64,000 nucleotides of DNA from Stylophora pistillata (Eukaryota): the NCBI RefSeq assembly GCF_002571385.2, contig NW_019218060.1:155579-219578 (forward strand), written 5' to 3'. How positions within the stretch are numbered: position 1 is the first letter of the stretch; every line of letters starts with the position of its first letter. Of this stretch, positions 6,060 through 13,042 are shown in pieces. A program made the position numbers and the translations under genes. The notes below the pieces were generated by a model. That model was not told the origin of the DNA, did not search any database, and saw only the letters and a program-made list of their open reading frames with translations.

Positions 6060-9000
6060 ATGGCCTCTGCAACATCTCCATTTGCATCTAGTGAAAAGGA
6101 AAATTATTACCGGTTATACCGCCTTCTGGTTGAAGTAGGATCTGAGGTGTTGAGAGCGACATTTGACAAGGTTCGTCCTTCAGGGGACCTTGATAAACTC
6201 TTAGCTAATCCTCGAATAACTGCTAAATTACGGTCACTTTGGGAGAAAGAAGTCCTCAGCTCTTCACAGTGGGACAAACTGTACCCCTCGGTTCGATCTG
6301 CAGTTTCTTCAAGGGACTTTGACACAGCCCTGCTAGGAATTCTTCTGATGAGCATCTGTTATCTTCATCCACCTGAGACAGGGTGGAATGAATTTCCCTG
6401 TATCTCAGATACAACCATCCATGCGGACATCATTCGCTTTCGATTCTACTATGTTATGATTCACAATCTCTCTAAAGAGGCTGCAATTGATGACACAGCA
6501 TTTAACTTCTTCTGGAAGAATATCCAAGATATCTTAGTGCGTTTAGGAGGAGCATTTTATAAGAAGGCTATCGATGATCTTAAAAGGGAACTTTTAGACG
6601 CTGCATGCGAGGAGCACTATAACATTCTCTTTAAACAAGAGGCTGCGAGGAAAGATATTTCTCCCGTGGAGAGCCTACTTTTATCAGCGATGGTAACCGG
6701 AGTTGGATTACTAACTGGACGTGTGCCAATATCAGGTTATAATTTAATTCTCTAATGAATACTATTTTTTCTTTTTGATTTTTCTTTATAACCTATCACG
6801 TCTGATTTTAAAGACTCTTTCTTTATTGGGTAAACTAAATGCATGATCTTATCAATGTAAATGGGTTATTGCAGAGTATGGCAGAACTCGACGATATCTT
6901 GTATTTTAACAAATGCAATAAAACCTATGACCACAGTCTGAATTCTGCTGGCAACAAACCCTTTTACGGTTGGTGAGAGCAATGTATCCGACACATACGA
7001 CCGTACCGACCTCGATGACTAAACATTTTGTGGTTGTGTTTTTGGTTCGTTTTTCTTTCTTTCTTTCGTTCTTTCTTTCTTTTCTTTTTTGTTCAAGAAA
7101 ACAACCAAGAGGCAATTTCTCTCTCTCGAAAAAAAACAATAACCGTCATGGAACATCAATTTTTTTTAATTGCTCTTTAGATTAAACGATCAAATTTAGG
7201 GGGTGTTATTGCTTAATGTCACAGTGGTGGCTAACGTTTGTGAGTGTGTGGTGTGAATTACTGCGATTGTTTGATGTTATTCTTTTCATTAAATGCGAAA
7301 TTTTGTTGATTTAGGTGAACTAGTACCCTTGATCATGGCTCACTTATTTGTGGCCATTGCGGCGTATAAATCCGACGAAGGGGAGAGATCGCAAGATGTC
7401 AAAGCAAAGAAGAACGAGGGTAAATAAATTATATTTGAGTAATGATTATGTTGCTGTTGTCTCAGCTTTTTTGTTCAGTGAGTGACAAATACCCTGCCGC
7501 CAACAACAGTGGTTTGTTTCATGCACAGAGTACACCATTGTTCCCGAAGAAATCCTTGCACGTGGACCCTTGACATTGTATGCTTACAACAAGGCTCTCA
7601 TGGAGGGAAAAACTAAGGTAAGAAGATTGCCAATCATGTTAATTGGACAAGATCGGGCAGGAAAGACCAGTTTGAAAAGGTCACTCAAGGGAGAAAGGTT
7701 TGATGCCAATGAGAAGAGTACCTCGGGTATAGAGGTGGATCCCTTCCTTTTTGAAGTAACCACCGAGGTATGGAGGCTGCAAAACCTCGATCAAGTTAGT
7801 TGCTGTAGTCCCACCACTTCATTTGAACACCAAGCAGCACGACTTGTTGCAAATGAATTGATTGATACGAAAGAGACTGGTAATGGTACAAATGGGACAT
7901 TAACTGACACTACGCCTAACTCTCAGGCCAAGTATGATCCCCCTATGACCTATGACAGCCTTCAATTAAATCACAGGATTAGCCACACAAATGACTCAGC
8001 CCAAGCGCAAAAGCAGGCCTTGACTGAACCTGGCATGCCTGAAGAGTTAGTAGACTTAATAAGAAGTCAGTTGTTCGAAGATGTAAAGTCAGACGACGAG
8101 GAAGAGATATATTCAATTCTGTGGGATTTTGGTGGGCAGCTGGTTTACTATGTAACACACCCTCTCTTTTTGACAAAGCGAGCCATCTATCTCTTAGCCT
8201 ACGACCTCAGCCGGAATCCCAACGATCGAGCTAGTCCATCCGAAAGACGAGGATTGTTTGGCAATGTACAAGACAGGTTTTGTTTGGAGACCAACTTCGA
8301 CTACCTGGACTCATGGATGTCATCTGTGGCTTCCTTAGTCGATCATTTCAACGGTCATTATTCAAATATGAACCAATCAGACAACCTGCCAAAAAAGCTT
8401 CCCCCGGTTTTCTTAGTTTGTACTCATGCTGATAGGGCATATAGTGATCAAGATCCTGCCTCGCTGGCAGCTAACATCTTTGGATCCCTTCAAGGTAAGC
8501 TGTACAGTTCCCACTTGTTTAAAAGTGTCTTTGCTGTAGACAACACCAAGGCGGGTACCGAGCACGAGTGTCCAGAAGTCATACGTTTAAGACAAGCAAT
8601 CCTCTCAGTTGTTGAGGAGCTACCGCATGTCAGGGAGGACATTCCATTAAAGTGGCTAAAATTTGAAAAAGAACTACACCGCAGGATCAATGAGGACATT
8701 AAATGGATCTCTTTTGAAGAAGCAAGGCAAATTGCATTTGAAACGTGCTACATTTCTGACGAACTAGAATTTACGACTTTGTTAAACTTTTTACACGACC
8801 AGCGTATTGTAATTCATTTTGATGACACACCAAGTCTAAACAAGATGGTTGTGTTAGACGTTCAGTGGCTGATCGATGTTTTTAAAAGGGTAATAACTGT
8901 CGAGCCGTATGGTGTAGAAGGAAGTCATTTTGAAGACCTTTGGCTCGAACTTGAGAAAACTGGTATTCTACATGAAGAACTGCTCGAGCACGTGTGGGGT

Positions 9001-12000: not shown

Positions 12001-13042
12001 GTAACCTTCGTTCTAGAAACCACTGGCAACTACATGTTTACTAAGAGTTTAAGAATATCAAATTTCTTCACGCCTTCGAATATTTGCTGGTGCGTTGTTA
12101 ACACCACTCAATAGGTCCCTTTCAGAATTACCTTCAATCAACCAGACAATCAAACTAGGCGAACCAGTTTTAGTTGAATTGCAGCAATTTAAACGTGAAG
12201 TTGATCTGCCTTTTTTTTCTGTTCCCTTTTTACTTCCGTTCTTGTTAATTTATTTGTGTGTTAAAATAAAGGGCAGGGTTGTCCGTTAGCTTATTTTAAT
12301 CCAAAAGTTTTTTCCAGGTGATTAAAGTGATGTGGATTTCCGTCTGCCACAATCTCAGTATCCTCATGCATTTCTCCTGTTTAGGCCCACTTTTACCTGA
12401 AGAACTAGATATTCAAAAATTCCCCATCGCCAGATGAAGGAACTAACGATCAGCTTGTGTGGTAAAAAAGACTTTAACTGTCTTCTCTATAAAATGCATT
12501 CGTATTTTGATATCTAGGTCAATATTAAGCAAAGGTTACCAGTGACGACTTGTTCTAGGGCGGCAAAGTTGTTTTTAGGAAGTTTTTGTCATGGGAAGTC
12601 ATCTATTTCAATATGATATTAATAGTCCAATCTTTCTGTTTTGTTGTGTAACTTTTTGTGAAACGTATCTAGAACGCTCTTGACCAATGATTCTAATGAA
12701 GCGGTTACAATTACGCTTAATTATCTTCAATTATGGCAAGGGATCACAGGTGACCAGACGTGTCGCTCTTTATTTCACTACCGTAGGACATATGTGAGCA
12801 TTTAACGATTCTTCACTTATACCAAGAATTCGCTTATGTCTCTCTCAGGTGGAGATGAATGGAAGCTGCTTGCAGAGAGACTGGGTCTGAGCGCCGTCGA
12901 GATCTGTTACCTTGACAAGAGAACCATAAATCCATGTCTTGAGGCTCTGATGCACAGCCGTAGACAGCGTTTTATTGACGTGGGTTATCTTTACGATACT
13001 TTGGTTGAATTTGAAAAGCCCATGTTAGCTGACTTGTTGTAA
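6060..13042 (+). CDS. Kinase-less ROCO protein: DZIP3-like HEPN + Roc GTPase + COR + death domain (apparent 1-bp frameshift in exon 6)
   Basis: GT-AG exons 6060-6735, 7315-7419, 7529-9783, 9986-10040, 11105-11344, 12385-12461 and 12849-13042; phases match except exon 6. Roc motifs GQDRAGKTS (G1), STSG (G2), WDFGGQ (G3) and CTHAD (G4). COR motifs IPLKWL, LNFLHDQ, DVQWLIDVFK and YLVPSML. N-terminus KENYYRLYRLLVEVG...DFDTALL...PPETGW is typical of DZIP3-like HEPN. C-terminus DEWKLLAERLGLS...LYDTLVE...LADLL is death-domain-like. Confidence 0.85.

What the first reader, a model, noticed from the sequence alone, without database searches (positions are those of the whole stretch)
6060..13042. HEPN-Roc-COR-death domain: candidate ROCO-based innate immune/cell-death switch
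Seen: one spliced gene joins a DZIP3-like HEPN N-terminus to a complete Roc-COR module and a C-terminal death domain, with no kinase, LRR, ankyrin or WD40 region. Known: DZIP3-like HEPN domains occur as N-terminal effectors on cnidarian NACHT/NLR-like and other P-loop immune proteins. HEPN RNases act as dimers, COR is a dimerisation module, and DAPK1 has Roc-COR-DD but with a kinase. Inference: Roc-COR may replace a STAND NTPase as a nucleotide-gated dimeriser that couples HEPN to death-fold signalling, a poorly characterised defence architecture.
Basis: partly seen in the sequence, partly recalled or inferred. Interest (0 to 1): 0.85.

Follow-up and report, generated by a model that had tools for sequence, protein, structure and literature searches.

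The report
Coral HEPN–Roc-COR–death-domain gene
This is a real, expressed coral gene that places a probably non-catalytic HEPN domain in front of a Roc-COR GTPase and a death domain; it is one rare variant in a large coral family of Roc-COR–death-domain proteins with interchangeable front ends, a plausible but untested non-NLR immune or cell-death switch.

Summary
The window is Stylophora pistillata and the gene is RefSeq LOC111335609. It has seven coding exons between 6060 and 13042. Pfam confirms HEPN_DZIP3 (E 5e-43), Roc and COR-A, and finds no kinase, LRR, ankyrin, WD40 or NACHT.

Contigs from three RNA studies join every exon. One contig runs from the HEPN exon into the Roc exon, and all three continue into the death-domain exon.

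- **Frameshift.** In this assembly the penultimate exon is 1 nt short (77 instead of 78 nt). This gives a TGA at 12435-12437 ahead of the death domain, so RefSeq's protein lacks it. The RNA contigs and pocilloporid orthologues carry the in-frame form. The window holds a truncating allele of an otherwise intact gene.
- **HEPN motif.** The canonical catalytic RNxxxxH motif is replaced (R→Y, N→V, H→L). All 15 HEPN–NLR relatives checked that keep an R…H pair have it in that register. An RNase effector role is therefore unsupported.

Roc-COR–helical domain–death domain is a recurring chassis in this genome, with about 45 COR-A and 37 death-exon matches. N-termini elsewhere include SH3-SH2, kinase and Ras-like domains. 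A HEPN match lies within a few kb of a COR-A match only at this tandem pair. Ka/Ks is 0.25 for Roc-COR and 0.24-0.39 for HEPN.

Verdict: new variant of a known kind, moderate interest.

The parts
6060..6735 (+). Coding exon 1: start codon and the DZIP3-type HEPN domain (domain about 6183-6620). It ends in phase 1. Its last ~30 codons begin a hydrophobic linker.
   Evidence: Pfam HEPN_DZIP3 E 5.3e-43. 100% tblastn match to RefSeq protein P0001 residues 1-226. Joint 6735->7315 in 3 RNA runs. Ka/Ks 0.24-0.39 against pocilloporid orthologues.
6435..6470 (+). Degenerate HEPN active-site helix (R-F-R-F-Y-Y-V-M-I-H-N-L). The canonical catalytic R is Y, the N is V and the H is L. A shifted R..H pair (Rx6H) remains.
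   Evidence: Alignment A1 with 10 other genomic HEPN copies. 7 of 7 nearest HEPN-NACHT proteins have Y-R-N-x-x-x-G-H at this place. Orthologues keep the non-canonical form.
7315..7419 (+). Coding exon 2 (35 codons): the second half of the only hydrophobic stretch of the protein, followed by a charged linker.
   Evidence: Joints 6735->7315 and 7419->7529 in 3 RNA runs. Kyte-Doolittle 19-residue maxima of 1.62 and 1.88 occur only here. Part of P0001.
7529..9783 (+). Coding exon 3 (751 codons). It holds the Roc GTPase: P-loop 7645-7671, switch I TSGIEV 7720-7737, a ~110-residue insert, DFGGQ 8125-8139 and THAD 8419-8433. It also holds COR-A (8644-9120), COR-B and a Cys/His-rich module (about 9571-9765).
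   Evidence: Pfam Roc and COR-A. phmmer to M. barkeri Roco2, C. tepidum Roco, LRRK2 and LRRK1. Motif coordinates. Foldseek of the orthologue's model to LRRK1, CtRoco and LRRK2 over about 760-820 columns. Ka/Ks 0.25.
9986..10040 (+). Coding exon 4 (55 nt), a short linker that shifts phase 0 to phase 1.
   Evidence: Joints 9783->9986 and 10040->11105 in 3 RNA runs. Present in P0001.
11105..11344 (+). Coding exon 5: a family-specific six-helix domain with no recognisable fold relative.
   Evidence: 26 homologous exons in the genome lie between COR and death exons. AF2 pLDDT 76.5 with six helices. No convincing PDB match by sequence or fold. Ka/Ks about 0.3.
12385..12461 (+). Coding exon 6: linker plus death-domain helix 1. 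In this assembly it is 77 nt (an A5 run at 12415-12419), one base short, giving an in-frame TGA at 12435-12437.
   Evidence: Translations. Orthologues have 78 nt with CAAGAAA. RNA contigs have +A behind 12414 (X8, X12) or +G behind 12416 (X17). The DNA-like run X5 has the short form. Joint 11344->12385 in 3 RNA runs.
12849..13042 (+). Coding exon 7: death-domain helices 2-6 and the stop codon. It is reached in frame only in the 78-nt form of exon 6.
   Evidence: Pfam Death 17.1 bits as the only hit. The orthologue P0006 scores 23.7 bits, above the cut-off. Profile A2 hits FADD, TNFRSF25, MyD88, p75 and RIPK1 death domains. The loose ends behind 12463 in X8, X12 and X17 equal the letters at 12851 onwards.

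Best explanation
An expressed, selectively constrained gene of Stylophora pistillata (LOC111335609). It is a rare member of a coral-expanded ROCO subfamily. The subfamily has a constant chassis: Roc GTPase, COR-A/COR-B, a Cys/His module, a small helical domain and a C-terminal death domain. Its N-terminal module is exchangeable. Here that module is a DZIP3-type HEPN exon recruited from the HEPN-NACHT (NLR-like) family.

Shown: the exon structure, the single transcript, the domain identities, intact G1-G4 GTPase motifs, loss of the canonical HEPN catalytic residues, purifying selection on HEPN and Roc-COR, conservation of the gene order in pocilloporid and Oculina orthologues, and a 1-nt-shorter allele in the reference that stops the protein before the death domain.

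Inferred: as in other Roco proteins, the nucleotide state of Roc-COR controls a monomer/dimer or oligomer cycle. That cycle sets the proximity of the C-terminal death domains, which recruit death-fold partners as the output. The HEPN domain, having lost its RNase motif, acts as a non-catalytic input or adaptor. It could bind RNA as human DZIP3 does (my own knowledge, not checked here), or make homotypic contact with the many HEPN-NLR proteins. It is not a nuclease effector. The hydrophobic segment between HEPN and Roc may tether the protein to a membrane. An immune or cell-death role is likely from the family's evolutionary pattern, but it is untested.
For: Gene and transcript. Six GT..AG introns are supported in three RNA studies, and X8 record 22 bridges the HEPN and Roc exons.

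Domains.

GTPase motifs: GxxxxGKT, TxGI, DFGGQ and THxD are present and nearly invariant in the family.

HEPN motif loss.

Constraint: Ka/Ks is 0.24-0.39 for HEPN, 0.25 for Roc-COR and about 0.3 for exon 5.

Orthologous loci with the same order (HEPN ORF, small ORF, Roc-COR ORF, Death ORF) occur on Tara coral metagenome contigs. The Oculina protein P0006 carries HEPN, Roc, COR-A and Death.

Family chassis: about 45 COR-A matches, 37 death-exon matches and 26 exon-5 matches. Many lie on the same strand within 2-6 kb of each other.

Other N-termini occur in annotated coral relatives: SH3/SH2, kinase and Ras/Arf-like.

HEPN origin: the nearest relatives are HEPN-NACHT-LRR proteins at 48-53% identity.

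Allele.
Against: There is no functional or condition-specific expression data. Contigs cannot give expression levels.

The death-domain exon shows weak constraint (Ka/Ks 0.73-0.81, from only about 41 synonymous sites). The reference allele lacks the domain altogether, so the death domain may be dispensable.

The HEPN domain is under purifying selection and keeps a shifted R..H pair in pocilloporids, so residual catalysis is not excluded.

Dimerisation, GTP binding, membrane association and death-domain partners are all inferred from other Roco and death-domain proteins.

The AF2 model of the orthologue is of low confidence in the HEPN and linker regions.
Confidence: 0.55

Rival explanations
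1. HEPN is an active RNase effector. Roc-COR dimerisation brings two HEPN domains together to form the composite active site, while the death domain signals in parallel.
For: HEPN RNases generally act as dimers and COR is a dimerisation module (established knowledge, PMC6337361 and PMC3710099). The HEPN exon is under purifying selection (Ka/Ks 0.24-0.39). A shifted R-x6-H pair is conserved in Stylophora and the pocilloporid orthologues.
Against: The canonical R, N and H of the Y-R-N-x-x-x-G-H helix are Y, V and L here. 8 of 9 other genomic copies fetched, leaving out the tandem paralogue, and 7 of 7 nearest NLR-type relatives keep an R..H pair in that register. The tandem paralogue also lacks the motif. 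The Oculina orthologue has no R..H pair.
Confidence: 0.12
2. A non-immune signalling or trafficking ROCO protein, like LRRK or DAPK1. The HEPN and death domains serve as ordinary protein-interaction modules in housekeeping pathways.
For: Characterised eukaryotic Roco proteins act in trafficking, the cytoskeleton and autophagy (PMC6337361). Part of the stretch is held by 8 runs on record as RNA, from 4 studies, which suggests constitutive expression. Purifying selection acts on the core.
Against: The family is a lineage-specific expansion with shuffled N-termini, tandem duplicates, a dead neighbour copy and a segregating truncating allele. Both accessory domains are typical of invertebrate immune repertoires (PMC8260672, PMC3710099).
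Confidence: 0.2
3. A gene in decay. After a tandem duplication both copies are degenerating, and the HEPN-ROCO fusion is a short-lived by-product of exon shuffling with no lasting function.
For: The upstream paralogue has two in-frame stops in its Roc exon and no death exon. The reference allele has a frameshift. The HEPN catalytic motif is lost. The death exon has Ka/Ks near 0.8.
Against: Open reading frames are intact in RNA contigs of three studies and in two orthologous metagenome loci. Ka/Ks is 0.25 over 2.2 kb of Roc-COR. The architecture is retained in Oculina at 59% identity.
Confidence: 0.08

Closest known systems
DAPK1 (ROCO group 3: kinase-ankyrin-Roc-COR-death domain)
   Same: Roc-COR followed by a C-terminal death domain, with no LRR before Roc.
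   Different: No CaM-kinase and no ankyrin repeats. Instead it has an N-terminal HEPN, a Cys/His module and an extra helical domain before the death domain. By sequence the Roc-COR is closer to M. barkeri Roco2 (E 1.9e-21) than to LRRK2 (E 3.5e-10). DAPK1 did not appear in the PDB sequence search.
Cnidarian HEPN_DZIP3-NACHT(-LRR) NLR-like proteins
   Same: The same type of N-terminal HEPN exon. The nearest relatives of this HEPN are such proteins at 48-53% identity. This is a large expansion, with at least 150 scored HEPN copies in this genome.
   Different: The central NTPase is a Roc-COR GTPase, not a STAND ATPase. There is no repeat sensor domain. The canonical catalytic motif is lost here and kept in the 7 nearest NLR-type proteins checked.
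Prokaryotic AP-GTPase (Roc)-COR conflict systems (Kaur et al. 2021, PMC8195603) and LRR-Roc-COR Roco proteins (CtRoco, MbRoco2)
   Same: A Roc-COR core with variable flanking domains. The concept of a Roc-COR GTPase displacing a STAND NTPase. The best PDB sequence match is MbRoco2, including the helix that precedes Roc.
   Different: Those proteins carry N-terminal LRRs and C-terminal effectors. This is an animal gene with introns, a HEPN N-terminus and a death-domain C-terminus.
Aplysia ROC-COR fusions to TIR/MyD88-like proteins (PMC9334734) and brown-algal LRR-ROCO candidate receptors (PMC11378527)
   Same: ROCO modules joined to innate-immune adaptor or sensor domains in lineage-specific families. 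The brown-algal family diversifies by exon shuffling.
   Different: Different partner domains (TIR, LRR). No HEPN fusion is mentioned in the passages of the Aplysia paper read here; the brown-algal paper was seen only as a title and abstract.

Membership tests
ROCO proteins | Roc (Ras-like) GTPase domain with G1-G4 motifs | tested here: met
   Pfam Roc E 2.2e-13. GQDRAGKTS, TSGIEV, DFGGQ and THAD are located. They are aligned to MbRoco2 and LRRK2 and are nearly invariant in the family. A ~110-residue insert lies between switch I and G3.
ROCO proteins | COR domain (COR-A and COR-B) directly after Roc | tested here: met
   Pfam COR-A E 1.3e-20. The AF2 model of the orthologue P0006 aligns over about 760-820 columns to LRRK1, CtRoco LRR-Roc-COR and LRRK2. 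COR-B rests on the fold match of the orthologue only.
ROCO proteins | Nucleotide-dependent dimerisation through COR | not testable with these tools
   The Roc-COR exon is 751 residues, so two copies exceed the complex predictor's limit. A biochemical test is needed.
ROCO group 3 (DAPK1-like) | Kinase and ankyrin repeats N-terminal to Roc | tested here: not met
   No Pkinase or Ank hit at E <= 0.1 in P0001 or P0006.
ROCO group 3 (DAPK1-like) | C-terminal death domain | tested here: met
   It is joined in RNA contigs and in frame in the 78-nt allele. In the window's own allele it is cut off by TGA at 12435-12437.
ROCO groups 1 and 2 (LRR-Roc-COR, with or without kinase) | LRR domain before Roc | tested here: not met
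   No LRR hit. The exons before Roc encode HEPN and a hydrophobic linker.
HEPN superfamily, DZIP3/hRUL138 family | Match to the family profile | tested here: met
   PF18738 at 146.7 bits, covering profile positions 2-144 of 144.
HEPN superfamily, DZIP3/hRUL138 family | Rx4-6H catalytic motif at the canonical position | tested here: not met
   Canonical R->Y, N->V, H->L. A shifted Rx6H pair exists, but it is absent from the Oculina orthologue.
Death domain (death-fold superfamily) | Profile match above the curated cut-off, and a six-helix bundle | tested here: inconclusive
   The window's last exon alone (helices 2-6) scores 17.1 bits against a 22.6 cut-off. The joined exons were not searched, by rule. 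The orthologue P0006 scores 23.7 bits, and the paralogous proteins P0066, P0072 and P0099 score 25-28 bits. Profile A2 hits FADD and other death domains at E 0.004-0.5. The orthologue's model has six helices at 1123-1197.
NLR / STAND NTPases | NACHT or NB-ARC domain | tested here: not met
   None found in P0001 or P0006.

The most novel reading that the evidence does not exclude
Corals possess a distinct class of intracellular receptors. In it a Roc-COR GTPase, not a STAND NTPase, is the switch, a death domain is the common output, and the shuffled N-terminal modules are sensors or integrated decoys. Those modules include inactive HEPN, SH3-SH2-pseudokinase, kinase and Ras-like GTPase. The HEPN variant would sense RNA or would guard the HEPN-NLR system. 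The natural death-domain-less allele would act as a built-in modulator.
Probability: 0.2. Interest if true: 0.8.

Novelty: new variant of a known kind. Interest (0 to 1): 0.45.

Why it matters
If the family works as inferred, it gives animals a second NTPase chassis for immune or cell-death signalling besides NLRs. It would parallel the bacterial Roc-COR conflict systems and the ROC-COR/TIR fusions of molluscs, in an organism where immunity and symbiosis control are of ecological importance.

There are two practical points. First, the RefSeq protein lacks the death domain because of a 1-nt-shorter reference allele. Proteome-based censuses will therefore miss this architecture. Second, the HEPN domain should not be counted as a nuclease. 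The natural truncating allele offers a ready genetic contrast for testing what the death domain does.

Tried and rejected
- **Spliced protein not assembled or searched.** Full-length sequences were used only as database proteins (P0001 for this gene, P0006 for the Oculina orthologue).
- **Census with the Oculina N-terminus**: it found only itself, probably because alanine-rich words swamped the candidate list. This is uninformative.
- **Census with this gene's HEPN region**: only 8 proteins, none with Roc-COR except the gene itself.
- **Exon-5 helical domain as a second death-fold.** The sequence profile against PDB gave nothing. Foldseek gave nothing at E <= 0.001. VIA-align's best Z was 6.7, to generic helical repeats. 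No assignment was made.
- **HEPN exon against PDB sequences:** no relative.
- **Rfam over 5000-14000:** no match.
- **Death exon of the upstream paralogue:** not found in L002 or in window 1-6000.
- **Direct 11344->12849 splice** (needed for an in-frame death domain in the window's allele): not seen in RNA contigs. Contigs drop rare isoforms, so it is not excluded.
- **Transmembrane reading of the linker:** only a hydropathy peak supports it. AF2 gives low confidence there, and the pocilloporid orthologues carry charged residues inside it. It remains a possibility only.
- **Complex prediction was not used.** The report does not claim a specific protein pair, and two Roc-COR copies exceed its size limit.
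- **Human-like or N stretches:** none was met.
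Full report
**Identity and gene model.** The window is contig C276:155579-219578 of a 398-Mb assembly. The large exon is 100% identical to RefSeq 'uncharacterized protein LOC111335609 [Stylophora pistillata]' (P0001, 1127 aa). tblastn of P0001 and reading of the splice sites give seven coding exons on the + strand:
- 6060-6735
- 7315-7419
- 7529-9783
- 9986-10040
- 11105-11344
- 12385-12461
- 12849-13042

Each was searched by reference. Full-length sequences were used only as database proteins.

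**Domains.** Exon 1 is a full-length HEPN_DZIP3 domain (E 5.3e-43). The large exon carries Roc and COR-A. The last exon gives Death as its only hit, at 17.1 bits and below the cut-off.

The Oculina patagonica orthologue P0006 (59% identical in Roc-COR) scores for HEPN_DZIP3, Roc, COR-A and Death (23.7 bits, above the cut-off). No kinase, LRR, ankyrin, WD40 or NACHT is found in either protein.

A profile of 18 paralogous copies of the last exon hits FADD, TNFRSF25, MyD88, p75 and RIPK1 death domains. The alignment starts at about residue 17 of the domain, so it covers helices 2-6. Helix 1 lies in exon 6.

The Roc-COR exon matches M. barkeri Roco2 (E 1.9e-21), C. tepidum Roco, LRRK2 and LRRK1. 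An AF2 model of P0006 has mean pLDDT 63.5, with a confident core and weak HEPN and linker regions. It aligns over about 760-820 columns with LRRK1, CtRoco and LRRK2, which also covers COR-B.

The G1, switch I, G3 and G4 motifs are intact and nearly invariant in the family.

**One transcript.** Of the 20 runs that hold part of the stretch, 8 are on record as RNA, and these come from 4 studies. The best of them hold 0.56-0.60 of the sampled words; the coding exons make up 0.52 of the stretch.

Contigs of three RNA runs from three studies were laid on 6540-12539. They show GT..AG joints at 6735->7315, 7419->7529, 9783->9986, 10040->11105 and 11344->12385. One contig (X8 record 22) spans the HEPN, linker and Roc exons.

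In all three runs the contigs continue beyond 12461/12463 with letters identical to 12851 onwards, which is the death exon (compared). The gene is one unit.

**The frameshift.**
- In the window, exon 6 is 77 nt. The frame coming from exon 5 reads ...DIQKFPIAR and stops at 12435-12437. RefSeq's protein ends there, without a death domain.
- The remainder of the exon, read one base later, gives IPHRQMKELTISLC. This matches death-domain helix 1 of the Oculina orthologue and leads in frame into exon 7.
- Two orthologous loci on Tara coral metagenome contigs have 78 nt, with CAAGAAA where the window has CAAAAA.
- The RNA contigs carry one extra base at that spot: A behind 12414 in X8 and X12, and G behind 12416 in X17.
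- A DNA-like run of 2024 (X5) differs from the assembly at several SNPs but shares the short form.
- The most economical reading is an ancestral CAAGAAA, then a G->A change creating an A6 run, then a 1-nt slippage deletion in the reference haplotype.
- The window thus carries a truncating allele, or less likely a homopolymer error, of a gene whose intact alleles are expressed.
- The stop lies 24 nt before the last junction. By the usual 50-nt rule (my own knowledge) such an mRNA would escape nonsense-mediated decay and could yield a death-domain-less protein.

**HEPN is probably not a nuclease.**
- I fetched ten other genomic HEPN copies for alignment A1. Eight of the nine that are not the tandem paralogue have an R..H pair in the canonical register.
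- The seven nearest database relatives, all HEPN-NACHT proteins, have Y-R-N-x-x-x-G-H there.
- This gene has Y-Y-V-M-I-H-N-L at the same place, so the canonical R is Y, the N is V and the H is L.
- The tandem paralogue also lacks the motif. The pocilloporid orthologues keep the same non-canonical helix. The Oculina orthologue has no R..H pair.
- A shifted Rx6H pair survives in Stylophora and the pocilloporids, so catalysis cannot be excluded outright.
- Anantharaman et al. 2013 (PMC3710099) list the motif as 'mostly conserved' in this family. They list fusions to NACHT, CARD, DEATH and LRR, but not to Roc-COR.

**Family context.**
- The genome holds at least 150 scored HEPN_DZIP3 matches out of 254 candidates. 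It holds about 45 COR-A matches, 37 homologues of the death exon and 26 of the exon-5 helical domain.
- Many COR-A, exon-5-type and death exons lie on one strand within 2-6 kb of each other. Roc-COR-helical domain-death domain is therefore a recurring chassis.
- Annotated relatives in Oculina and Montipora put SH3/SH2, kinase, or Ras/Arf-like domains at the N-terminus. Another first-stage note on this genome (s1-786173) reports an SH3-SH2-pseudokinase version.
- A HEPN match lies close upstream of a COR-A match only on C276: this gene and its upstream neighbour LOC111335610. This is a lower bound, since weak HEPN copies were not scored.
- That neighbour has two in-frame stops in its Roc exon and no detectable death exon.
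- The HEPN domain's nearest relatives are HEPN-NACHT-LRR proteins at 48-53% identity. This fits recruitment of a HEPN exon from the NLR-like family.

**Constraint.** Measured against the two orthologous loci:

| Exon | Content | Ka/Ks |
|---|---|---|
| 1 | HEPN | 0.24-0.39 |
| 3 | Roc-COR (over 2.2 kb) | 0.25 |
| 5 | helical domain | about 0.3 |
| 7 | death domain (few sites) | 0.73-0.81 |

The orthologous loci keep the order HEPN ORF, small ORF, Roc-COR ORF, Death ORF.

**Other anatomy.**
- The only hydrophobic stretch lies between HEPN and Roc, with Kyte-Doolittle maxima of 1.62-1.88 here and 2.19 in Oculina, where it is a ~50-residue Gly/Ala-rich segment. A membrane tether is possible but unproven.
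- After COR-B there is a module with nearly invariant Cys and His residues, about eight ligands. It is presumably zinc-binding.
- The exon-5 domain folds as six helices but has no convincing structural relative.

**Mechanism (inferred).** By analogy with CtRoco and LRRK2, where GTP turnover is coupled to a monomer-dimer cycle (PMC6337361, PMC5714945), nucleotide state would control self-association and thus the proximity of the death domains as output. The variable N-terminal modules would be inputs, adaptors or decoys. The inactive HEPN fits that role better than an effector role. No result here tests immune function.

**Novelty.** Roc-COR as an alternative to STAND NTPases is described for bacteria (PMC8195603, PMC7159879). 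ROC-COR fused to TIR/MyD88-like proteins is described in Aplysia (PMC9334734). ROCO genes as candidate receptors are described in brown algae (PMC11378527). HEPN_DZIP3-NACHT is known to be abundant in anthozoans (PMC8260672, PMC10236652). I found no paper describing HEPN-Roc-COR-death domain or the coral Roc-COR-death-domain expansion. The library is limited, so this does not prove absence. I rate it a new variant of a known kind, of moderate interest.

Noticed in passing
L002 (G000:C276:146000-155578), just upstream of the window: The tandem paralogue LOC111335610 has a HEPN exon (L002:2070-2633), a Roc-COR exon (3825-6068) with two in-frame stop codons, and homologues of exons 5 and 6. No death exon was found. 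RefSeq models only a 715-aa protein that starts after the stops. It looks like a decaying duplicate.
   Followed up: partly
window 11762-12105 (intron between exons 5 and 6): A ~345-bp interspersed repeat with at least 38 copies at 77-91% identity across the genome. DNA contig depth there is about 25-fold higher, and RNA contigs with variant copies also map there. It has no Rfam match. It is probably a SINE- or MITE-like element.
   Followed up: partly
window about 9571-9765 (end of the large exon): A Cys/His-rich module after COR-B, with nearly invariant C, C, C, H, C, C, H, C across 109 family members. The AF2 model of the orthologue shows short strands here. It is probably a zinc-binding domain specific to this coral ROCO family. 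Pfam finds no family.
   Followed up: partly
window about 7795-8115: A ~110-residue low-complexity, Ser/Thr/acidic insert between switch I and the DFGGQ motif of Roc. It is absent from MbRoco2 and modelled with low confidence. Its sequence varies among family members.
   Followed up: no
window 11105-11344, and 26 homologous exons elsewhere in G000: A family-specific six-helix domain between COR and the death domain. It has no recognisable relative by sequence or fold.
   Followed up: yes
P0006 (Oculina patagonica) residues about 213-262: The orthologue's linker is a ~50-residue Gly/Ala/Val-rich hydrophobic segment containing a GxxxGxxxG pattern. It may be a membrane hairpin. The Stylophora and pocilloporid linkers are much less hydrophobic.
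   Followed up: partly
window 6603, 7350, 7566: All three RNA runs share the same differences from the assembly (G>A, G>A, A>T). The DNA-like run X5 has the assembly's letter at the first two sites and G at the third. This is probably haplotype structure, but it was not resolved.
   Followed up: no
RefSeq model of LOC111335609 (P0001): The annotated protein ends at ...PIAR, before the death domain, because of the 77-nt exon. Proteome-based domain censuses will miss the death domain of this gene.
   Followed up: yes
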